Part shown: piece by piece, positions 3 to 34,001 of the stretch | How the letters are laid out: each line of letters starts with the position of its first letter | Numbering within the stretch: position 1 is the first letter of the stretch | Virus record (IMG/VR): IMGVR_UViG_3300042484_002457 | Coordinates: 1-64,000 of that record | Length of the DNA: 64,000 nt | Direction: 5' to 3' (one strand) | Translations under genes and position numbers: made by a program | The notes under the pieces: generated by a model | Seen by the model: only the letters and a program-made list of their open reading frames with translations | Database searches by the model: none | What the model was told of the DNA's origin: nothing

Positions 3-971
3 ACAAGTACCCCTAACTCAGACGAAGACCAGTTTGCTTATATCTGGAAGGGTGCCAACAAGATTGAAGACGAATTTGGCAATCTGCGACCCAATGGCCT
101 TGGCATCAACGGTTTCAAAGCGTTTCGCGCTTTCTGGCGCGAGCATCCAGATCGTGATGATAAGTGGGCCGAAGAACAGCGTAGCCAACTGGGAGATGAA
201 CGTTTCCGTCGTGAAATGGACTGTGATTTTGTTATCAATGATGAAACATTGATTGCTCCTATCAAGCTGCTGGAAATAGAAGGGGTAGAACCCATACGTA
301 AAACAGGGCAAGTGCGTTGGTATCGCAATATAGAGCCTGACAAAATGTATATTGTTGCCCTTGACCCAAGCCTGGGCACAGGCGGAGATCCTGCAGCCAT
401 ACAGGTGTTTGAAGCAGACACCACACACCAAGTAGCAGAATGGCGCCACAATCGCAGTGATATCCCCACACAGATCAAGACCATGGTTGATATCATCAAA
501 GAGCTTCATTTGGTGACAAAGAACGAAAAACGCATTTACTTTTCAGTAGAGAACAATACCATTGGTGAAGCTGCACTGTTGAGTATTGCAGAATACGGGG
601 AAGAAAACATTCCTGGATACTTTTTGAGTGACAACAGTGTGGTAACTGGAACCAGCAGAAAGTTTCGCAAAGGGTTCAACACCACGCACAAGTCCAAGCT
701 CACAGCTTGCAACAAGTTTAAAATTCTAGTGGAATCTGGACGTATGAAAATATACTCCAAGCCCTTGGTTACTGAACTCAAAACATTTGTGGCTTCAGGC
801 ACTAGTTTTGCAGCAAAACCCGGAGAAACAGACGATCTTGTGATGTCAAGTTTGCTGGCAACTCGCATGCTGTTGCTGCTGCAAAGCTATCATACCGAGC
901 TTGACAGTCACCTCAAAGACCACACAGACAGCATAATTGAGCCTTATCCGTTCATAGCACTGCTTCGATAA
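3..971 (+). CDS. Terminase large subunit (T4 gp17-like), C-terminal part; 5' end lies outside the window
   Basis: Frame is open from nt 3 (TSTPNSDEDQF...WREHPDRDDKW...RFRREMDCDF). RNase H-like nuclease motifs VALDPSLGTGGD, VENNTIG, GFNTT and DDLVMS. Confidence 0.9.
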   Translation, partial: TSTPNSDEDQFAYIWKGANKIEDEFGNLRPNGLGINGFKAFRAFWREHPDRDDKWAEEQRSQLGDERFRREMDCDFVINDETLIAPIKLLEIEGVEPIRKTGQVRWYRNIEPDKMYIVALDPSLGTGGDPAAIQVFEADTTHQVAEWRHNRSDIPTQIKTMVDIIKELHLVTKNEKRIYFSVENNTIGEAALLSIAEYGEENIPGYFLSDNSVVTGTSRKFRKGFNTTHKSKLTACNKFKILVESGRMKIYSKPLVTELKTFVASGTSFAAKPGETDDLVMSSLLATRMLLLLQSYHTELDSHLKDHTDSIIEPYPFIALLR

Positions 972-981
972 ATACACAACC

Positions 982-3471
982 ATGGCTACACAAAACACTA
1001 TTGAACAACAATTACAAGACACTCTTGCCACCCGGAATTTTGAAACAGAAATGCTGGGCGCAGATGGTAAACCTACAAATCAAGTACAAGACGCAAAAAC
1101 TTTTACTTTTGATTATGTGTCAGGATCAGGTAAAAACTACGGAACCATGGTCATTGTGCTTGATACTGACAATGACATGAAAATCATGTACGGTGACAAT
1201 CTGGGACGTACCATGGAGCCACAAGACAAAGATGAATTCTTTGATTTTCTAGAGCACATGGGACTCTTGGCTCGTCGCAATCGTTGGACACGTACCACAC
1301 AAGATATAAACCAACTCAAGTACACCATGCAAGGTCTTGCAGCCATCAAAGAAGGCTTGTTTGAAGGTTACTATGGTAATCGAATTGTGAGCTACAGCGG
1401 CCAGCCCACTGAAGCCAGACTCATGATCCGACACAGTCAACAGCTAGGTGAGGATGATGCTAGATATCGTCACGTGGAAAGTATTTTTATTGAAACCACT
1501 GACGGTGAAAGATTCAAACTAGAGTCTCGTAGTTTGTCAGCAGCCCGTGCCATGCTGGAACATGTGCGTCAGGGTGGCAAGCCCTATGATGTACGTGGCA
1601 GTCATATTACAGAAATGATACGAGAAGTTGCAGTATTGAGCAGATTCAATCGTGCCAGCAGCCGTCGTGTAATGGAAGGTGTCACACAGCAAATTGTAGA
1701 ACAGGCCCAGCATTACTACAAACAACTGCGTGAAAACATCAAACATCTAGCAGCACCACGTGGATACAAATCTTATTTTGAAACATGGCATCCTGCAACA
1801 ATAACTGAGCAGGATGAGTTGGTTGAAGGTATCAAGAATTTATTCATTGAGCAACGTATTGATTCCAGAATTGAAGAAGCTTTACCGTTGCTGGCTAGAT
1901 TACAAAAACAAGGACAAGATATGAAAGAAATTAAAATGTTTGAATCTTGGGTAGAGACCCTGGGCGAAGGCACTTGGGCATTGCCCGACGACCCCGAAAC
2001 TCAGCAAAAGCTCAATGACCTAATGGCCAAAGAACTCATTGTTGGCCCCGACGCTACCAATGCTACTGAACAATTATATGATGTGGTTGGCGACGATGAA
2101 TTGTTTGACATACTACAAGACCTAGCACAGAGATCTGATGGTCGCGCCAACGTCTGGGACGATACTGATGTTCAACGTAGATTGAAAGAACTTGGAGTTC
2201 AATTGCCTACACCCAGTGCAGGTCTTGAGCAACCAGCACCTACTCCCCCAGCAGGCGGCGCACCTGGTGCAGCATCCCCTCCAATGATGGAAGCAATCTT
2301 GGACGAGAGTGGCGAAACACTGGACCATATTTTGAGTAGATTCAAAAATGAAGTCAAGCGATTTGAAACTGGCGACGACTTGGACAATGATTTGTACTAT
2401 GCACTGTTTGACTATTACTCAGACGCTGGCGAAATACCTTATGGTATTGCCAAAGGTCGCGACGGTGACCCGTATGAGTGGATTACTGATCGACTTGATC
2501 AGGAATTGGGCACTGGCAACTATGCACCACGATTGCCTGAAGCTGATAACATGGCCACTTTTGTTGAAGGCAACGGCTGTAACATGACCATGGAAGGCGA
2601 ATATTGTCCAGAACACGGTTTAATGGAATGTGGCATGATGGAAATGGGAACAGTAGCCGGCGGTGTAGCTACTGTAATGGGCGAACAAGACACAGCCGAA
2701 GGCATGTTGGGTAATCCAGGGCAAGAAGACAGCCCAGCTGCACAAGCAATCACACGTAGAATTTTGATGCAACGCACAGACTTGCTGGCCAAGTACGGTC
2801 CAGAAAAAGTTATGAGTGCTATTGACGAAGTTGCTGACTTTGTGGGCGATGTAGACGAGATTGGAAGTAGTGATGTTTCAGGTTGGGTTCGACAGGTAGA
2901 GCAAATGCTGGGCAACATGAAACAAGGCATGGCTGAAGGCTCAGGAACAAACAAAACACATTTAGCAATGGCATATCTAAAAGCAGTAGTCATGGCTCCT
3001 ATGGGAACCCCAGAAAAAAGAAGAATACTAAATTGGCAACAGATACTATCAAATCAATTTGATATCGAAATGGATCCTGCTACCCTTGCTCAAATGCTAC
3101 CACAACTTGACAGTCAGTTACAGTCAGGCAATCTGGATAAACTACAAAACCGAATGGCTAGTCGTGGCGAACTTGAAATAGGCGAGAGCGAGCAAGGTGT
3201 GGCGGAGGTTAGTGATGCTACGCTAACCAGTTATCTAACAAAATTAGATAAAGATAATCTTAAACACAGAATGGATCCCACAAAACGCAGTGACACAAAA
3301 CGCATGAAAAGTGGTCCTAATTTTGTTAAAGCGTTTACCAAATTGGATAATAGAAAGCAAGGTGTGGCGGAGGCTGATGATCCGATCAACTACAATGCAG
3401 CCATAACCGGCAGCTATTATGAATCTCAAGATCCATTGGCAAGAATAAAATCGCTAGCCCTGCGCAAGTGA
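982..3471 (+). CDS. Large acidic modular protein, probable virion head/internal protein
   Basis: 829-aa ORF; TAAATA 7 nt upstream; C-terminal modules delimited by QG[VM]AE motifs. Confidence 0.55.
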   Translation: MATQNTIEQQLQDTLATRNFETEMLGADGKPTNQVQDAKTFTFDYVSGSGKNYGTMVIVLDTDNDMKIMYGDNLGRTMEPQDKDEFFDFLEHMGLLARRNRWTRTTQDINQLKYTMQGLAAIKEGLFEGYYGNRIVSYSGQPTEARLMIRHSQQLGEDDARYRHVESIFIETTDGERFKLESRSLSAARAMLEHVRQGGKPYDVRGSHITEMIREVAVLSRFNRASSRRVMEGVTQQIVEQAQHYYKQLRENIKHLAAPRGYKSYFETWHPATITEQDELVEGIKNLFIEQRIDSRIEEALPLLARLQKQGQDMKEIKMFESWVETLGEGTWALPDDPETQQKLNDLMAKELIVGPDATNATEQLYDVVGDDELFDILQDLAQRSDGRANVWDDTDVQRRLKELGVQLPTPSAGLEQPAPTPPAGGAPGAASPPMMEAILDESGETLDHILSRFKNEVKRFETGDDLDNDLYYALFDYYSDAGEIPYGIAKGRDGDPYEWITDRLDQELGTGNYAPRLPEADNMATFVEGNGCNMTMEGEYCPEHGLMECGMMEMGTVAGGVATVMGEQDTAEGMLGNPGQEDSPAAQAITRRILMQRTDLLAKYGPEKVMSAIDEVADFVGDVDEIGSSDVSGWVRQVEQMLGNMKQGMAEGSGTNKTHLAMAYLKAVVMAPMGTPEKRRILNWQQILSNQFDIEMDPATLAQMLPQLDSQLQSGNLDKLQNRMASRGELEIGESEQGVAEVSDATLTSYLTKLDKDNLKHRMDPTKRSDTKRMKSGPNFVKAFTKLDNRKQGVAEADDPINYNAAITGSYYESQDPLARIKSLALRK
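2923..3373 (+). repeat. In-frame direct repeats encoding QG[VM]AE
   Basis: AGCAAGGTGTGGCGGAGG is identical at 3191-3208 and 3356-3373; degenerate CAAGGCATGGCTGAAGGC at 2923-2940. Confidence 0.85.
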
Positions 3472-3473
3472 CA

Positions 3474-3656
3474 TAAATAAACGCATAAAAGAAGGGCATG
3501 TAGTGGCATGCTCTTCCGTAAACAACTAGATAGGCAAAGTTCATTACCGTAAAGGTAGGAAGCACAGACAAGCTGTGTTAAAATAACTTGTAGGCAACAT
3601 TTAAGCAAGACTTAAATTTTTTAAATCATATTAACGCACATGAAAGGCAACACAAT
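3474..3656 (+). promoter_or_regulatory. TAAATA promoter plus multi-hairpin 5' leader of the ssDNA-binding protein gene
   Basis: TAAATA 3474-3479; hairpins 3491-3516, 3544-3558, 3561-3579 and 3599-3617. Confidence 0.55.
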
Positions 3657-4658
3657 ATGGCATCCTTAGCAGAAATTCGCGCACGTTTACAAGCATCCGA
3701 AAACAAAGGCTCTCAGAGCACAGGCGGTGGCGACAGGTCAATTTACCCGCACTGGAACATGGAAGAAGGACAAAGCGCAACGCTGCGATTCCTTCCCGAT
3801 GGAAACCCCAAAAACACATTCTTCTGGCAAGAGCGAGCCATGATCCGACTGCCCTTCAACGGCATCAAAGGTGAAATGGAAAGCAAGCAGGTCATGGTAC
3901 AAGTACCCTGCGTGGAAATGTGGGGCGATGCTTGCCCAATCTTGGCAGAAGTACGCACCTGGTTCAAGGACAAGAGTCTTGAAGACATGGGTCGCAAATA
4001 TTGGAAGAAGCGCAGCTACATCTTCCAAGGCTTTGTTCGTGAGAACCCCATCTCTGATGACACTACTCCGGACAATCCAATCCGTAAATTTATCATTGGT
4101 CCGCAATTGTTTACCTTGATCAAATCAGCTTTGATGGATCCTGAATTGGAAGAACTACCTACCGACTACATGCGTGGCCTTGACTTCCGTATCACCAAGA
4201 CTGCCAAGGGTGGATATGCTGATTACAACACTTCCAAGTGGGCACGTAAAGAGTCGGCACTAACTGAAGCAGAACAAGCAGCAGTTGACGCTCATGGCTT
4301 GTTTGACTTGAGCACATTCTTACCCAAGCGCCCAGGCGATGTCGAGTTGAAGGTGATTAAAGAGATGTTTGAAGCATCAGTTGACGGTCAACCATACGAT
4401 ACAGAACGTTGGGGTCAGTACTTCCGTCCAGCAGGTGTTAATGCACCAGGCGGCGCAAGTGGTGATGCAGAAACTCCAGCACCTGCCGCAGCACCTGCCC
4501 CGTCAGCTCGCCCAGCAGCACCTGCTCCAGTAGCAGAAACTCCTGCTTGGGAAGATGACGCAGCAGAAGCAGCAGCAGCACCGGTAGTTAAGCCAGCAGC
4601 TACTGGTCAAAATGCGCAAGACATTTTGGCTATGATTCGATCAAGACAAAAACAATAA
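3657..4658 (+). CDS. Single-stranded DNA-binding protein (T4 gp32-like)
   Basis: LRFLPDG, CPIL, YWKKRSY, G.DFRITK..KGGYADYNTSKW; Ala/Pro/acidic tail; next to UvsX and UvsY. Confidence 0.88.
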   Translation: MASLAEIRARLQASENKGSQSTGGGDRSIYPHWNMEEGQSATLRFLPDGNPKNTFFWQERAMIRLPFNGIKGEMESKQVMVQVPCVEMWGDACPILAEVRTWFKDKSLEDMGRKYWKKRSYIFQGFVRENPISDDTTPDNPIRKFIIGPQLFTLIKSALMDPELEELPTDYMRGLDFRITKTAKGGYADYNTSKWARKESALTEAEQAAVDAHGLFDLSTFLPKRPGDVELKVIKEMFEASVDGQPYDTERWGQYFRPAGVNAPGGASGDAETPAPAAAPAPSARPAAPAPVAETPAWEDDAAEAAAAPVVKPAATGQNAQDILAMIRSRQKQ

Positions 4659-5575: not shown

Positions 5576-6631
5576 ATGGCAAAACCATTTGACATTAGCA
5601 AGTTCCGCAAGGACATCACTAAGAGCATCGACGGCCTTAGTATCGGATTTAACGATCCTACTGATTGGATTAGTACTGGCAATTTTGCCTTGAATTATCT
5701 CATCTCAGGCGACTTTAACAAGGGAATTCCTTTAGGTAAAGTCACTGTGTTTGCTGGTGAATCAGGTGCTGGTAAAAGTTACATCTGTTCTGGAAATATT
5801 GTTAAGCATGCACAAGAACAAGGTATTTTTGTTATCTTAGTTGACTCAGAAAACGCACTTGACGAGAAGTGGTTGCATGCACTTGGAGTAGATACTGACG
5901 AAAGTAAGCTACTCAAACTTAATATGGCTATGATAGATGACGTAGCTAAAACAATTTCAACATTTATGATTGATTACAAAGCACTTCCAGATGGCGAACG
6001 CATGAAAGTACTATTTGTGATTGATTCGTTGGGTATGTTGTTGACACCAACTGACGTTAATCAGTTTGAAGCAGGTGATATGAAGGGTGACATGGGTCGT
6101 AAGCCTAAAGCACTAACAGCACTTGTTCGTAATTGTGTAAACATGTTTGGCTCGCATAACGTTGGTTTAGTAGCAACTAACCACACATACGCATCACAAG
6201 ATATGTTTGACCCAGATGATAAAATCTCTGGAGGTCAAGGTTTCATTTACGCATCGTCAATCGTTGTTGCGATGAAGAAAATGAAGTTAAAAGAAGACGA
6301 AGACGGTAACAAAGTTTCTGAAGTGAACGGTATCCGTGCTGGCTGCAAGATTATGAAAACACGTTATGCAAAACCTTTTGAGGGTGTGCAAGTGAAAATT
6401 CCGTATTCAACAGGCATGAGCCCATATAGCGGAATGGTAGACCTGGCCGAGAAAAAAGGTTTGCTCAAGCGTGAAGGCAATAGTTTGGTATTCACTACAA
6501 GTGATGGAGAAATTATTAAGAAGTTTCGTAAAGCATGGGAAAAGAACGATGACGGTTGTTTAGACAAAGTCATTCAAGATTTTGGCAATCAGAAGGAAGA
6601 GGTAAGTACCGTTGAAGGAGATGAAGAATGA
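5576..6631 (+). CDS. uvsX: RecA/UvsX recombinase
   Basis: Walker A GESGAGKS, DSENA, VIDSLGML, ISGGQGFIYASS, KTRYAKPF. Confidence 0.93.
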   Translation: MAKPFDISKFRKDITKSIDGLSIGFNDPTDWISTGNFALNYLISGDFNKGIPLGKVTVFAGESGAGKSYICSGNIVKHAQEQGIFVILVDSENALDEKWLHALGVDTDESKLLKLNMAMIDDVAKTISTFMIDYKALPDGERMKVLFVIDSLGMLLTPTDVNQFEAGDMKGDMGRKPKALTALVRNCVNMFGSHNVGLVATNHTYASQDMFDPDDKISGGQGFIYASSIVVAMKKMKLKEDEDGNKVSEVNGIRAGCKIMKTRYAKPFEGVQVKIPYSTGMSPYSGMVDLAEKKGLLKREGNSLVFTTSDGEIIKKFRKAWEKNDDGCLDKVIQDFGNQKEEVSTVEGDEE

Positions 6632-31391: not shown

Positions 31392-32100
31392 AATTACAGC
31401 TCGTAAACTAAATGAAATATCCTTGGCCGGAGGATTTGCCGGTGCTCTTGCAAACAAGTTTGTTTCGTCAACTCTGGGTATTGATGCCAGAGATACTCCG
31501 TCTGACGATCCCTTGGCAAGATCCAAAGGTGCCATGGAGATCAATAAACAGCTCGCTGGAAAAATGGGGCAAGAGCTGAACAAGATGTGGGGTCAGGTGG
31601 TTCAAAATTTCATGGCCACCCATAAGGACACCAGCGGCTATCCATTGAACAATATAAAAAGTGCGGCGCCAGCAGATGCTGCCAAGTTGAGTCAGGAATT
31701 AGATAAAATCGTTGTAGATATGTCTCGCGTCGGCAAAGCCCTGGACCAATGGGCAGCAGGAATCAACACTGGTGATCCCAAGGATGCTGCTGAAGCCAGA
31801 GTAATGGTAGGACAACTCAAAGACATCAAAGATGCTATCTGGAAAGAAACACTAGATCCATCAGATACTAGTGGCCAGGCCCGAGCTCAAGCGTTTGCCA
31901 AGCTTGGTACAGCCATTGCACAAATACAAAACATCAATAGCTTTGTTGAACAATCTAAAAAATCAGGTGCTGCACCCGGAACACCAAGAGTAACAACAGA
32001 TCCAAGAACAAACGCTTTCATGGTTGATCGTCAACCATATGATCCAAAGAACCCCGTTCACGTAACAGCCGTGAAAGACTTTATAAACTCAAAAAAATGA
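31378..32100 (+). CDS. Hypothetical protein, probable head-internal protein
   Basis: AAGGAG SD; N-terminal MQIHEI...LNE. Confidence 0.55.
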   Translation: MQIHEITARKLNEISLAGGFAGALANKFVSSTLGIDARDTPSDDPLARSKGAMEINKQLAGKMGQELNKMWGQVVQNFMATHKDTSGYPLNNIKSAAPADAAKLSQELDKIVVDMSRVGKALDQWAAGINTGDPKDAAEARVMVGQLKDIKDAIWKETLDPSDTSGQARAQAFAKLGTAIAQIQNINSFVEQSKKSGAAPGTPRVTTDPRTNAFMVDRQPYDPKNPVHVTAVKDFINSKK

Positions 32101-34001
32101 ATCTTTTAAAAGAAGGCGGCAATGTTTTCAAAGACAAACAAGGCCAACCACTAACACAACGAATCAACCAAGCTGATGTGCCAGGCACTGTACAATGGCT
32201 GGAATCTGTGCTGGGCATGGATCTCAGCGGAGAAAAAGACCCTGCTACTGGATACCCCAGTCGTTGGCTGGGCAGCACAGGAAAAAAAGCCACGTCAGGT
32301 GACCTTGACATTGCCATAGACACAAACGAAATCAGCAAAGGTGAACTGGCCAACAAGCTCACAAATTTTATCGTCAAGCAGCAGTTAGATCCAAAAGAAT
32401 GGGTCAGGCAAGGCGGGGAAGTACACTTCCGCACTCCCATCAATGGTGACCCTGATCGGGGCTATGTGCAGACTGATTTTATGTTTTTCCCTAATCTTGA
32501 CTGGGGCCAATTCTTTTATGGCGGCGCAATAGACTCTGCTTACAAAGGCATGAACCGTAATGTGCTCATGAGCAGCATTGCCAAGAGCCTGGGACTCAAA
32601 GTGGGTGCCAACGGTGTATTCAGCAGAGCTAGCGAAAAGCTGGTAAGTCAAGATCCTGATCAATTAGCACAGTGGCTACTGGGATCCAACTTTGATCGTG
32701 GGCACTTAAAAAATGTTGAAAGCATTTATGCAGCACTCAGTAATGATCCTGCCATGGATGCCAAGCTTAAAGATTTTCGTGATTATCTAGCTCGAGAAGG
32801 TTTACAAGAACCACAGCAGGGCGTGGCCGAAAGTGAAGCAGGCTTTTTGGGACGACTGCGTGATCGTATTGTGAATCGTGGATATGTTGCTCTTGTAGAA
32901 GCAGAAGCAGCCGGAGTAGGCGGTAGAGCCAAGGGCATCGAACACCTGGAAGACTATGTGTTTCGCAAAGGCACAGCTGGCATACAACAGGCCTTGGAAA
33001 TTGTGCAGCAGGCCACAGCGGCTCCCAAGACTACCACAGCCAAATGGGATGGTAAGCCTGCTGTGATATTTGGACGCAAACCTGACACAGGCGAGTTTGT
33101 GCTCACAGACGGGTCAGGATTTGAAGCCAAGGGCTACGATGGCCTGGCCACAAGTCCCCAAATGATGGCTGACATTCAGAACCGTCGATCTGGTGATAGA
33201 ACTGAGTTGATTCAGATCTATGCCACATTGTTTCCTTTGCTAGAAGCATCACTGCCGCAAAACTTTCGAGGATATGTCAAGGGTGATTTGTTGTACATGA
33301 GCACCCCGCCCCTGCAAGCCGGCAATTATGTGTTCAAGCCCAACACTATTGAATACCGTATTCCAGCAAAGAGTGCCCTGGGCCAGCGCATCAGCAACAG
33401 TACCATTGGCATTGCTATTCACTCAATGTATGCTGATGTGGGCGAGCCACGTCAGCCACTGAGTGGAGTAGCATTTAATCCAGTACCTGGACTGATGCTG
33501 GAAAAACCAGCTACTCCCAAGGCTTTGCAGACTGAGACCAATGCTGAAAAACAACTCAGAGAGATAGTTCGCACACACGGCAAAGACATTGATACCTTGT
33601 TTAATCCAGTTGAACTGCGAGCACACAAGATTACTGACCTAGCCAAACTAGCAGTAGACTACATCAACTCCAAGGTTGGTGCACCGCTAAACAAGCAAAC
33701 CCTGTTGCCAGAATTTGGTGACTGGCTACAACAAAAAGTTACCCCACAAAAGTTCAACAACATCGTGGAATATCTACGTAGTCCAACATCCAACACCACT
33801 GCATTGGCCGCTGCATTCACAGCATTTGTTCTGTTACATGATCTAAAAATGTACCTTAAACAGCAGGCCGATACTGAGTACCCAGGGCAAGAAGGCTGGG
33901 TTATGGCTACCCCTGCTGGCTACGCCAAATTGGTCGGCAGATTTGATCCCAAAGCTTTTGCTGCTCAAAATCGCGCCCAAAACAACCCTCAACAGGCATA
34001 A
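32097..34001 (+). CDS. Pol-beta-type nucleotidyltransferase fused to an RNA-ligase-like (DUF6267-like) domain
   Basis: LGSTGKKATSGDLDI and VQTDFM; QQGVAE linker; then KWDG, KGDLLY, EGWV and AKLV. Confidence 0.6.
   Translation: MNLLKEGGNVFKDKQGQPLTQRINQADVPGTVQWLESVLGMDLSGEKDPATGYPSRWLGSTGKKATSGDLDIAIDTNEISKGELANKLTNFIVKQQLDPKEWVRQGGEVHFRTPINGDPDRGYVQTDFMFFPNLDWGQFFYGGAIDSAYKGMNRNVLMSSIAKSLGLKVGANGVFSRASEKLVSQDPDQLAQWLLGSNFDRGHLKNVESIYAALSNDPAMDAKLKDFRDYLAREGLQEPQQGVAESEAGFLGRLRDRIVNRGYVALVEAEAAGVGGRAKGIEHLEDYVFRKGTAGIQQALEIVQQATAAPKTTTAKWDGKPAVIFGRKPDTGEFVLTDGSGFEAKGYDGLATSPQMMADIQNRRSGDRTELIQIYATLFPLLEASLPQNFRGYVKGDLLYMSTPPLQAGNYVFKPNTIEYRIPAKSALGQRISNSTIGIAIHSMYADVGEPRQPLSGVAFNPVPGLMLEKPATPKALQTETNAEKQLREIVRTHGKDIDTLFNPVELRAHKITDLAKLAVDYINSKVGAPLNKQTLLPEFGDWLQQKVTPQKFNNIVEYLRSPTSNTTALAAAFTAFVLLHDLKMYLKQQADTEYPGQEGWVMATPAGYAKLVGRFDPKAFAAQNRAQNNPQQA

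What the first reader, a model, noticed from the sequence alone, without database searches (positions are those of the whole stretch)
2683..3380. In-frame peptide cassettes delimited by an 18-nt repeat encoding QGVAE: possible shufflable virion polyprotein
Seen: the 829-aa ORF has QDTAEG (2686), QGMAEG (2923), QGVAEV (3193) and QGVAEA (3358), separating mutually unrelated modules of 79, 90 and 55 codons. The last two boundaries are an identical AGCAAGGTGTGGCGGAGG, including wobble positions (GTG GCG GAG), while the enclosed DNA looks more AT-rich than the gene body. QQGVAE also occurs at 32814-32831, between two enzyme domains of another protein. Established: T4 prohead protease gp21 cleaves after Glu in short hydrophobic-x-E motifs. 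Inference: the motif is both a maturation cleavage site and a DNA recombination site, so small cargo proteins are gained or lost in frame, packaged, and released as separate peptides.
Basis: partly seen in the sequence, partly recalled or inferred. Interest (0 to 1): 0.75.

Follow-up and report, generated by a model that had tools for sequence, protein, structure and literature searches.

The report
In-frame mobile cassettes in phage polyproteins
In an uncultured giant phage from lake water, small unrelated protein modules are strung together in long genes and separated by one short, letter-for-letter conserved DNA motif, and comparison with hundreds of related sequences shows that modules are swapped in frame exactly at this motif, which also looks like a cutting site for the phage's head protease.

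Summary
The 829-aa ORF (982..3471) carries QDTAEG, QGMAEG, QGVAEV and QGVAEA at the stated places. The last two sit in an exact 18-nt direct repeat (3191, 3356) that brackets a 55-codon, AT-richer module.

- The core GGTGTGGCGGA occurs 11 times in the 209.5-kb record, all in frame on the coding strand. Eight copies lie in a second, nine-module polyprotein outside the window. The motif uses a 7% Ala codon.
- Related lake-phage contigs keep the same codons while the flanks are unrelated.
- Module 3 recurs at 96% nt identity in a different carrier gene. Identity starts and stops exactly at the motif.
- 31 of 45 internal ends of nucleotide homology blocks fall on a motif, against 1.5 expected.
- Module 3 is in at least 30 carrier clusters and module 1 in at least 778.
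- An ortholog has an "empty site" with a single, slightly diverged motif.
- Lake metagenome contigs break at 3191 and 3371 into other contexts.

The protein half (cleavage after E, packaging, release) is only inferred. Support comes from gp21-like proteases in relatives, an MS-proven virion homolog of the N-domain, scaffold-like tails, and Tat signals directly after the motif. The 32817 site is not part of the system.

The parts
982..3471 (+). Carrier gene: 829-aa multi-module ORF between the terminase large subunit (216..971) and the SSB gene (3657..4658)
   Evidence: The same TerL - X - SSB - UvsX gene order is found in PA5oct and Vibrio phage 2.275.O.
982..2241 (+). Conserved N-terminal domain (aa 1-420). 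It is homologous to PA5oct gp278, a virion structural protein detected by ESI-MS/MS. Its fold is unknown.
   Evidence: phrog_13484 at 7.8e-13; tblastn; annotation. 2765 homologs whose N-terminal 50-70% is conserved and whose lengths range from 590 to 970 aa. The AF2 model has pLDDT 68 and no PDB match.
2242..2295 (+). Pro-rich linker ending in ...PMMEA. This is the first hot spot, where P0007 carries four extra GVAE-bounded modules and where the mosaic with L025 begins.
   Evidence: Alignment. Nucleotide identity to L025 jumps from about 62% to 82-100% near 2284-2341.
2296..2562 (+). Conserved middle domain (ILDESGE...ADNMATF)
2563..2700 (+). Cys-rich block of 46 codons, running from ...FVE|G to ...QDTAE|G. 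It is present or absent as a unit.
   Evidence: Absent in L025 and P0005. A lake metagenome contig joins 2565 to 2698 (skips 132 nt), with 7 letters fitting either side of the joint.
2701..2937 (+). Module 1 (79 codons), ending in QGMAE (2923-2937). It is the most widespread cassette.
   Evidence: 778 protein clusters at E<=1e-10, at positions 1-900 of proteins of 116-1506 aa. Also present in OWN_B-like carriers L044 and L049 and in L083.
2938..3207 (+). Module 2 (90 codons), ending in QGVAE (3193-3207)
   Evidence: It is found in the order mod2-mod3-mod1 in P0146-P0150.
3191..3208 (+). Left copy of the exact 18-nt repeat AGCAAGGTGTGGCGGAGG. This is the left crossover point of cassette 3.
   Evidence: Contigs in runs X1, X16 and X22 diverge into other upstream contexts at 3190-3191.
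3208..3372 (+). Module 3 (55 codons, 37% GC), a mobile in-frame cassette
   Evidence: 96% nt identical to a cassette in a different carrier (L049), with identity limited to the span from motif to motif. Present in at least 30 carrier clusters at 87-100% aa identity. Absent from P0001. Depth is about 1.5-4 times that of the flanks in four lake metagenomes.
3356..3373 (+). Right copy of the 18-nt repeat. This is the right crossover point.
   Evidence: A contig in run X16 leaves into another downstream context at 3371.
3373..3471 (+). Conserved 32-aa tail (...DPLARIKSLALRK) plus stop codon. All orthologs keep it whatever modules they carry. It resembles the C-terminus of the gp22-like scaffold of relatives (...DLKRLAGL). 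A capsid-targeting role is inferred.
32814..32831 (+). QQGVAE in a 634-aa enzyme-like protein (N-domain plus DUF6267 with a KxDG motif).
   Evidence: Non-canonical codons. The site reads EPEV-VKEN in the G004 ortholog.

Best explanation
The 829-aa ORF is one of at least two "beads-on-a-string" polyprotein genes of an uncultured freshwater jumbo phage. The phage is a distant relative of PA5oct and Rak2-like phages and has T4-type head genes in its relatives.

**Layout.** Short, mutually unrelated modules are joined by a linker with consensus (K/E)-Q-G-V-A-E|G. The linker is almost always written with the same letters, AA GGT GTG GCG GAA G.

**Shown.**
- This 15-18-nt coding motif is the junction at which modules are inserted, deleted, duplicated and exchanged in frame.
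- Exchange happens between the polyprotein genes of one genome and between co-occurring phages whose backbone genes are saturated at synonymous sites.
- Modules therefore behave as mobile in-frame cassettes.

**Inferred, DNA level.**
- The exchange is short-homology recombination by the phage's own UvsX-type machinery, or copy-choice, within the motif.
- The letter-level conservation is both its cause and its consequence. Cassettes flanked by the canonical letters spread, and old junctions decay (QDTAE, QGMAE, QGMEE).

**Inferred, protein level.**
- The motif is a hydrophobic-x-Glu site cut after Glu by a T4 gp21-type prohead protease.
- The carrier enters the prohead through its virion N-domain and/or its scaffold-like C-terminal tail.
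- The modules are then released as separate small proteins that travel with the DNA into the next host.
- Some then go further. One module of the second polyprotein exposes a Tat signal on a TonB-C-like domain only after such a cut.
For: **Motif statistics**
- 11 in-frame copies in the record, none on the reverse strand.
- It uses the rare GCG codon.
- In 80 IMG/VR loci, 102 of 103 exact 17-mers read QGVAEG in a long ORF, and the flanks carry no information.
- Most non-ascertained GxAE sites in the same genes use GGT GTG GCG GA, against about 0.5% expected.
- In G004 and G005, canonical (Q/E/K)GVAE(G/A/D) sites use these letters (one GCA exception in G005), while chance-looking GxAE sites do not.

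**Cassette behaviour**
- Module 3 matches L049 with identity running from motif to motif only.
- 31 of 45 homology-block ends lie at a motif, against 1.5 expected and a maximum of 6 in 2000 randomisations.
- A cassette copy between two adjacent carriers of one contig is 99.4% identical (L101).
- The order of modules 1, 2 and 3 varies between carriers.
- Module 1 is present in 778 clusters.
- The empty site has a single diverged motif.
- The mosaic breakpoint with L025 lies at the first x-x-E site.
- Population data show junction breaks at 3191 and 3371, excess depth over the cassette, and a joint (2565 to 2698) that skips the Cys block, with 7 letters fitting either side.

**Cleavage and packaging (indirect)**
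- Peptidase_S77 proteases and gp23-like capsid proteins are present in G001, G003, G005, PA5oct and the Vibrio phage.
- T4 gp21 cuts after L/I-X-E (PMC9026906).
- PA5oct gp278 is MS-proven in virions.
- The genes just upstream of the second polyprotein match virion structural protein families.
- The carriers have scaffold-like tails.
- Tat leaders sit directly after the motif in two carriers with different mature domains.
- Boundaries of module 1 in diverged carriers relax to G-[VM]-x-E. The peptide therefore needs less than the DNA conserves.
Against: - No cleavage has been observed.
- The window's own record and the related 343-kb contig G004 have no detectable gp21-like protease, scaffold or gp23-like capsid protein. 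The protease is therefore borrowed from relatives.
- P3 is Val, not the Leu/Ile of T4.
- Head proteins of relatives (MCP, scaffold) do not carry the canonical motif.
- 14-18 nt is short for RecA/UvsX-type recombination, so the enzymology is a guess.
- Selection against out-of-frame or mid-module junctions would by itself concentrate surviving junctions at linkers.
- Most comparison sequences are short-read metagenome assemblies. A cassette of about 190 nt shared by several genes can produce chimeric left/right combinations. Each single junction is still supported by contiguous sequence.
- A Tat-signal cargo fits at least as well with cytoplasmic processing as with capsid delivery.
Confidence: 0.62

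Rival explanations
1. The modules are released, but not in the capsid. The polyproteins are ordinary expressed genes. They are cut in the cytoplasm by a host protease, a carrier-encoded protease or a free phage protease, as in an RNA-virus polyprotein strategy. The products act in the producing cell, for example after Tat export to the periplasm. The DNA-level cassette exchange is as described in the best explanation.
For: - Tat signal plus TonB_C module.
- Carriers are very heterogeneous and most lack the scaffold-like tail; only 4 of 69 complete carriers match a strict tail pattern.
- DUF6321 and DUF6267 partners look enzymatic or soluble.
- No protease or capsid gene is present in the own record.
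Against: - The N-domain homolog is a virion protein.
- The second polyprotein sits next to virion structural genes.
- Glu at P1 with a hydrophobic P3 is the signature of gp21-family prohead proteases, which relatives encode.
- No protease domain was found in any carrier.
Confidence: 0.2
2. The letters are conserved for a nucleic-acid or translational function of their own. Candidates are a ribosome pause at domain borders (rare GCG, Shine-Dalgarno-like AAGGUG/GGAGG) or a protein-binding site. Recombination at the motif is then only a by-product of that conservation.
For: - Conservation of synonymous positions across very diverged phages.
- GCG is a rare codon.
- GGAGG is present in the two window copies.
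Against: - Only one of the five codons is rare.
- There is no shared RNA structure and no Rfam match.
- The motif never occurs out of frame, on the other strand or between genes.
- Junctions that have stopped exchanging drift freely (QDTAE, QGMAE, QGMEE).
- A pause signal does not explain why homology blocks end at the motif.
Confidence: 0.1
3. The motif is just a conserved uncleaved interdomain linker of multidomain "polyvalent" proteins. Identical letters reflect recent common descent of duplicated linkers.
For: - Multi-domain phage proteins delivered uncut are known, for example N4 vRNAP (PMC5512222).
- There is a weak Atlas lead to LPD domains of polyvalent proteins, score 0.58.
Against: - Linkers normally vary. 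Here six residues are near-invariant over 204 distinct sites.
- An internal Tat signal would be useless without a cut.
- Common descent cannot explain identical letters between unrelated flanks in genomes whose third codon positions are saturated.
Confidence: 0.05
4. Site-specific recombination: a dedicated recombinase or nuclease recognises the motif, as in a shufflon, an integron or homing.
For: The junctions are sharply defined and the core is invariant over 11-17 nt.
Against: - All copies are direct, never inverted.
- There is no attC-like structure.
- No recombinase is consistently next to the carriers in the loci inspected. This was not examined exhaustively.
- The one polymorphic deletion that was resolved has 7 letters fitting either side of the joint (GAAGGCA by inspection), which is typical of homology-driven or slippage events.
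Confidence: 0.03

Closest known systems
T4 internal proteins (IPI-III, Alt) with the capsid targeting sequence, processed by gp21 (PMC9026906, PMC3012670)
   Same: - Diverse, fast-evolving small cargo proteins are loaded into the prohead through a short conserved peptide.
- They are freed by a cut after Glu in a hydrophobic-x-Glu motif, and are then injected with the DNA.
- The conserved peptide is thought to let T4-like phages recruit varied cargo.
   Different: - In T4 each cargo is its own gene, with an N-terminal 10-residue leader.
- Here many cargos are in one ORF, separated by internal sites, and anchored by a large virion N-domain and/or a C-terminal tail.
- The conservation is at the DNA-letter level.
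- Cleavage here is not demonstrated.
PeSL-mediated modular shuffling in T4-type phages (Arbiol et al. 2010, PMC2839356)
   Same: Short conserved sequences that flank non-essential cassettes act as recombination points. They cause insertion, deletion and replacement between related phages.
   Different: - PeSLs are intergenic promoter plus stem-loop units that move whole genes.
- Here the repeat is coding, unstructured and 15-18 nt long. It keeps the reading frame and moves parts of a protein.
Polyvalent proteins of phages and conjugative elements (Iyer et al. 2017, PMC5512222)
   Same: They are large proteins of 2-15 disparate domains with extensive mosaicism. They are often encoded among late or virion genes, are thought to be delivered with the DNA, and are sometimes processed.
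   Different: - None of the hallmark domains (MPTase, ArdC-N, LPDs) was detected here.
- Processing there is ascribed to embedded peptidases, not to a repeated uniform linker.
- No conserved nucleotide junction has been described for them.
Multi-site processing of head and ejection proteins in giant phages (phiKZ gp175 at S/A-X-E; SPN3US gp245 at A-X-E; PMC10052503, PMC9026906)
   Same: A gp21-related protease cuts many internal head proteins after Glu. Some are cut at several sites.
   Different: - Those cuts mostly remove propeptides from dedicated proteins.
- The sites are degenerate and are not conserved as DNA.
- No cassette mobility is reported.
Polyproteins of RNA viruses; exon shuffling; integron cassette arrays (from general knowledge)
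   Same: - One ORF yields many mature proteins at uniform protease sites.
- Phase-compatible modules are exchanged at defined junctions.
- Cassettes are arrayed between repeated sites.
   Different: This is a dsDNA phage with no introns, no integrase or attC, and junctions inside the coding sequence.

Membership tests
Substrates of T4 gp21-type (Peptidase_S77) prohead proteases | A gp21-type protease is encoded by the same phage | tested here: inconclusive
   There is no PF03420 hit in the own 209.5-kb record, which is 58% complete. The family is present in relatives G001, G003, G005, PA5oct and the Vibrio phage. G003 and G005 also carry the motif. It is absent from the 343-kb relative G004.
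Substrates of T4 gp21-type (Peptidase_S77) prohead proteases | The site fits hydrophobic(L/I)-X-Glu, with the cut after Glu | tested here: inconclusive
   P3 is V in 91% of sites, with M, L or I in the rest. P1 is E in 100% and P1' is G in 73%, over 204 distinct sites. Val is a conservative departure from the T4 L/I rule (PMC9026906). The specificity of this clade's protease is unknown.
Substrates of T4 gp21-type (Peptidase_S77) prohead proteases | The protein is a head or virion component | tested here: met
   Met by homology only. The N-domain matches PA5oct gp278, which is annotated as a virion structural protein found by ESI-MS/MS, and phrog_13484.
Substrates of T4 gp21-type (Peptidase_S77) prohead proteases | Cleavage products are observed | not testable with these tools
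   There is no cultured phage with these modules and no proteome data.
Polyvalent proteins (Iyer et al. 2017) | Several unrelated domains in one polypeptide, with mosaic architectures, in a phage | tested here: met
Polyvalent proteins (Iyer et al. 2017) | Presence of the characteristic domains (MPTase, ArdC-N, LPD, DarB-like and others) | tested here: not met
   Pfam finds none in the window ORF. Other carriers contain only TonB_C, TAT signal, GNAT, DUF6321, DUF5872 and GP88. The only link is a weak Atlas lead to LPD15/34/11, score 0.58.
PeSL-type recombination cassettes of T4-type phages | Repeats flank the cassettes and coincide with the recombination junctions | tested here: met
PeSL-type recombination cassettes of T4-type phages | The repeat is an intergenic early promoter plus a terminator stem-loop | tested here: not met
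   The motif is always in frame inside ORFs. There is no consistent fold.
T4 internal proteins with an N-terminal CTS | Separate genes, each starting with a conserved leader of about 10 residues that ends in x-x-E | tested here: not met
   The modules are internal to ORFs of 829 and 1055 aa and have no start codons of their own.
Shufflons and site-specific inversion systems | Inverted repeats inside the coding region plus a dedicated recombinase | tested here: not met
   All copies are in direct orientation: 11 forward and 0 reverse in G000, and single-strand in G003-G007.
Integron gene cassettes | attC hairpin sites and an integron integrase | tested here: not met
   There is no hairpin at the motif. 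The integrase was not searched for exhaustively.

The most novel reading that the evidence does not exclude
A previously undescribed genetic system in freshwater jumbo phages: arrays of selfish, in-frame mobile protein cassettes inside polyprotein genes.
- One ~17-nt coding sequence serves as the crossover point for cassette exchange within and between phage genomes.
- The same sequence serves as the protease site that later separates the cargo.
- This gives the phage population a combinatorial, rapidly reshuffled library of virion-delivered small effectors, effectively exon shuffling without introns.
Probability: 0.5. Interest if true: 0.9.

Novelty: new variant of a known kind. Interest (0 to 1): 0.82.

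Why it matters
**Mechanism.** It would show that a phage can make part of its proteome modular at sub-gene resolution. A single short sequence, read both as DNA (recombination junction) and as protein (cleavage linker), lets unrelated small proteins be added, removed and traded in frame without ever breaking the carrier gene.

**Wider questions it touches.**
- It offers a concrete, testable route by which jumbo phages diversify the proteins they inject with their DNA. These are likely counter-defence or host-takeover factors, and they include periplasm-targeted ones.
- It explains the length variation of a virion protein family with more than 2700 members.
- It provides a natural design for packaging arbitrary cargo.

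**Annotation.** These ORFs should be read as strings of separate products. Assemblies around shared cassettes need long reads.

Tried and rejected
- **RNA element:** no Rfam match at E<=1 in 900-3700. Five motif contexts share no fold, with z-scores from -1.6 to +0.6.
- **Portal or other known fold for the N-domain:** the profile search against PDB sequences found nothing. The AF2 model has pLDDT 68 and pTM 0.37, and the best Foldseek E-value was 0.025 with TM about 0.1. The Atlas gave only weak leads.
- **AF2 of the cargo region, single sequence:** pLDDT 39, uninformative.
- **Protease and capsid genes in the own record:** none by Pfam-based search, tblastn or custom HMMs.
- **Nucleotide similarity to cultured phages:** none. 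Module 1 is absent from 50,697 phage records. The DUF6321 partner domain is common in cyanophages and pelagiphages, but that says nothing about cleavage.
- **Tandem-repeat or paralogy explanation:** rejected, because the modules are unrelated.
- **Inversion system:** rejected, because there are no inverted copies.
- **17-mer in bacterial genomes:** at least 120 single hits, mostly in 60-70% GC genomes such as Nonomuraea. I take these as chance or unrelated, so raw hit counts in large collections are not evidence by themselves.
- **The 32817 site as a member of the system:** rejected.
- **Literature:** no phage paper contains the motif, and none describes in-frame cassette exchange at protease sites.
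Full report
**What the window is**

The window is the first 64 kb of a 209,543-bp IMG/VR virus record that CheckV rates as 58% complete. Sequences nearly identical to the region occur in many lake-water metagenomes.

The gene order is TerL (C-terminal part at 216..971), the 829-aa ORF (982..3471), a gp32-like SSB (3657..4658) and UvsX (5576..6631). The same order is found in Pseudomonas jumbo phage PA5oct and Vibrio phage 2.275.O. In PA5oct the homolog of the ORF's N-terminal domain (gp278, 496 aa) is annotated as a virion structural protein found by ESI-MS/MS.

No cultured phage resembles the gene at the DNA level.

**Checking the observation**

- The 18-nt repeat occurs exactly twice in the window, with none expected.
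- The three modules of 79, 90 and 55 codons are unrelated to each other.
- The enclosed module 3 is 37% GC against 44.7% for the gene. Modules 1 and 2 are not AT-rich.
- QQGVAE at 32814 is real but is written with other codons.

**The motif across the genome**

The 11-nt core GGTGTGGCGGA occurs 11 times in the record. All copies are on the + strand and all are in frame as GVAE.

- One lies in a 392-aa DUF6321 protein at G000:141940..143118.
- Eight lie in a 1055-aa ORF at G000:130847..134014.

The 1055-aa ORF is cut by the motif into nine mutually unrelated modules of 63-230 aa. Among them:

- a TonB_C domain (PF13103, 2e-17) preceded by a twin-arginine signal that begins right after the motif;
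- a module with two CxxCxGxG zinc-finger motifs;
- a module whose relatives in other carriers match GNAT acetyltransferases.

The two genes upstream of this ORF match PHROG families of virion structural proteins.

From the genome's own codon usage the codon string is expected in about 0.1-0.5% of QGVAE peptides, because GCG is 7% of Ala codons. It is used in 11 of the 12 GVAE sites.

**The motif across related phages**

In orthologs of the 829-aa ORF that are only 59-68% identical in the N-domain, QGVAE is again CAA GGT GTG GCG GA(A/G).

In the 80 loci fetched:

- 102 of 103 sites read QGVAEG in the longest open frame.
- Sequence information drops to background within three bases on either side.
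- Most further, non-ascertained G[VMIL]AE sites in the same genes use GGT GTG GCG GA, although GTG is 17% of Val codons and GCG is 7% of Ala codons in those genes.

In the near-complete relatives G004 and G005, sites of the form (Q/E/K)GVAE(G/A/D) use these letters, with one GCA exception in G005. Chance-looking GxAE tetrapeptides do not.

The more distant relatives do not have the motif as a repeated element. PA5oct and the Vibrio phage show only 2-mismatch, chance-like hits. G001 and G002 each have a single one-letter variant, inside the ortholog of the 829-aa ORF.

The same 17-mer also hits at least 120 bacterial contigs. These are single copies, mostly in 60-70% GC genomes, and serve as a reminder that the hit count alone proves nothing.

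The peptide logo over 204 distinct sites is K/E - Q(74%) - G - V(91%) - A - E | G(73%) - S.

**Are modules gained and lost at the motif? Yes.**

*(a) Orthologs*

- P0001 (776 aa) lacks exactly module 3.
- P0003 and P0004 lack modules 1-3.
- P0005 and L025 lack the 46-codon Cys-rich block.
- P0007 has four other GVAE-bounded modules inserted in the Pro-rich linker.
- At the DNA level the empty site of P0001 holds one motif copy, CAAGGTATGGAGGAGGC. It is 15/17 identical to the canonical letters and is followed by one extra codon.

*(b) The same cassette in a different gene*

Module 3 is 96% nt identical to a cassette in L049. L049 is an 844-aa polyprotein with a different N-terminus and C-terminus. 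The identity starts at the first base of the left repeat and ends at ...GTGGCGGA of the right repeat, and both flanks are unrelated.

*(c) A general rule*

Among 96 non-redundant carriers, 31 of 45 internal ends of nucleotide blocks with at least 85% identity lie at a motif. Random placement gives 1.5 on average and at most 6 in 2000 trials. One contig, L101, has the same 50-codon cassette at 99.4% identity in two neighbouring carrier genes.

*(d) Breadth*

- Module 3 is found at 87-100% aa identity in about 30 protein clusters of 470-1372 aa. It is almost always bounded on both sides by cut sites, and its order relative to modules 1 and 2 varies.
- Module 1 is found in 778 clusters at E<=1e-10, anywhere from residue 1 to about 900 of proteins of 116-1506 aa.

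*(e) Mosaic backbone*

L025 is about 62% nt identical to the window gene through the N-domain, and third-position identity there is about 45%. From the ...MMEA / ...TVAEG site at about 2295 onward it is 82-100% identical.

*(f) Populations*

In four lake metagenomes:

- Depth over 3188-3395 is about 1.5-4 times that of the flanks.
- Contigs leave the window sequence at 3191 into the L049-type context (X1, X16) and at 3190 into a third context (X22).
- One contig leaves at 3371 into another downstream context (X16).
- One contig joins 2565 to 2698, skipping 132 nt of the Cys-rich block; 7 letters fit on either side of the joint (GAAGGCA by inspection).
- Other contigs in these runs bridge the window's own junctions, and L011 from another sample is identical. 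The window's arrangement is therefore real.

*Caveat.* Short-read assemblers can join the wrong left and right contexts across a shared cassette of about 190 nt. Particular module orders need long-read confirmation. The multiplicity of contexts at each single junction does not.

**Why are the letters conserved?**

No RNA family or common fold explains it. The motif never appears out of frame, between genes or inverted.

Junctions that are shared by descent rather than recently exchanged have drifted: QDTAE, QGMAE and QGMEE. Boundaries of module 1 in diverged carriers relax to G-[VM]-x-E. The peptide function therefore tolerates more change than the DNA shows.

The most economical reading is that short-homology recombination within the motif moves the cassettes, and that cassettes flanked by canonical letters are the ones that spread. 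This is inference. Three things were not separated here:

- the enzyme responsible;
- the contribution of simple selection against junctions inside modules;
- a possible translational role for the rare GCG codon or the SD-like run.

**Is it a cleavage site?**

This is not shown.

In favour:

- Relatives encode Peptidase_S77 (T4 gp21-like) proteases next to a gp22-like scaffold and a gp23-like capsid protein.
- Two of these relatives, G003 and G005, also carry the motif.
- T4 gp21 cuts after L/I-X-E, and phiKZ and SPN3US proteases cut after S/A-X-E and A-X-E (PMC9026906, PMC10052503). V-A-E|G is of that type.
- The N-domain is a virion protein by homology.
- The invariant 32-aa tail of the ORF (...LARIKSLALRK), the tail of the G005 ortholog (...LESIKMLSGVK) and a segment near the end of the second polyprotein (...MARLKKLAGAG) resemble the scaffold's C-terminus (...DLKRLAGL).
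- Two carriers place the same Tat leader immediately after the motif, in front of different mature domains. That only makes sense if a new N-terminus is created there.

Against:

- The own record and the related 343-kb G004 contig lack detectable head genes.
- Most carriers lack the scaffold-like tail.
- Tat cargo would also suit cytoplasmic processing.

**The 32817 site**

It uses non-canonical codons and reads EPEV-VKEN in the 66%-identical G004 ortholog. I treat it as outside the system.

**Comparison with known systems**

The protein logic resembles T4 internal proteins with their capsid targeting sequence, and the multi-site processing seen in giant phages. The architecture resembles polyvalent proteins. 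The DNA logic resembles PeSL-mediated modular shuffling (PMC2839356).

It is not a member of any of these by their defining features; the membership table gives the details. I found no paper that describes a coding, in-frame recombination junction coinciding with a protease linker.

**Verdict**

- The cleavage and packaging half is plausible, at about 0.6-0.7.
- I class it as a new variant of known kinds, of high interest.

Noticed in passing
outside the window: G000:130847..134014 (= L009:4847-8014): This is a second polyprotein of nine unrelated modules separated by eight (Q/E)GVAE|G sites. One module begins, right after the motif, with a twin-arginine signal (…DRRGFLKG…AKA|W) followed by a TonB_C domain. 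Contig L093 reuses the same Tat leader (90% nt) on a different mature domain.
   Followed up: partly
L162:226-1320, L040:232-1320 (scaffold genes of relatives); window 3373-3468: The gp22-like scaffold proteins end in …DLKRLAGL, or …RRLAGIK in PA5oct. The same kind of tail closes the 829-aa ORF and its orthologs. This may be a shared capsid-interior docking peptide.
   Followed up: partly
G004 (L165-L182), and G000 as a whole: G004 is a 343-kb contig rated 99% complete and closely related to the window (TerL 80%, UvsX 87%). It has no detectable gp23-like capsid protein, gp21-like protease or scaffold, and neither does the window's record. Either the head module lies on an unassembled part of still larger genomes, or it is too diverged to detect.
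   Followed up: partly
window 2563-2700: The Cys-rich block (C-x9-C-x7-C, …CPEHGLxEC…) is conserved in many orthologs. It is present or absent as a unit and is polymorphic in lake populations.
   Followed up: partly
window 32097-34001: A 634-aa protein has an unknown N-domain fused to DUF6267, which carries a KxDG motif like nucleotidyl-transferases and ligases. In G005 the DUF6267 part stands alone.
   Followed up: partly
outside the window: G000:141940..143118 and many loci (e.g. L074, L093): DUF6321, a 72-aa C-terminal domain common in T4-like cyanophages and pelagiphages, is a frequent partner module in these carriers. So are DUF5872-like …WPSAYASGALVQCRKKG… tails and GP88 (PF17338).
   Followed up: partly
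outside the window: G000:135693..136661: The phage encodes a TctC-family (tripartite tricarboxylate transporter) periplasmic binding protein. Together with the Tat and TonB modules it points to a Gram-negative host, possibly a betaproteobacterium.
   Followed up: no
L162:2609-3379, L040:2618-3421: An HNH homing-endonuclease-like gene lies directly downstream of the major capsid gene in relatives G003 and G001.
   Followed up: no
window 2520-2993 (- strand): A 157-aa antisense ORF overlaps modules 1-2. It has no support and is probably spurious.
   Followed up: no
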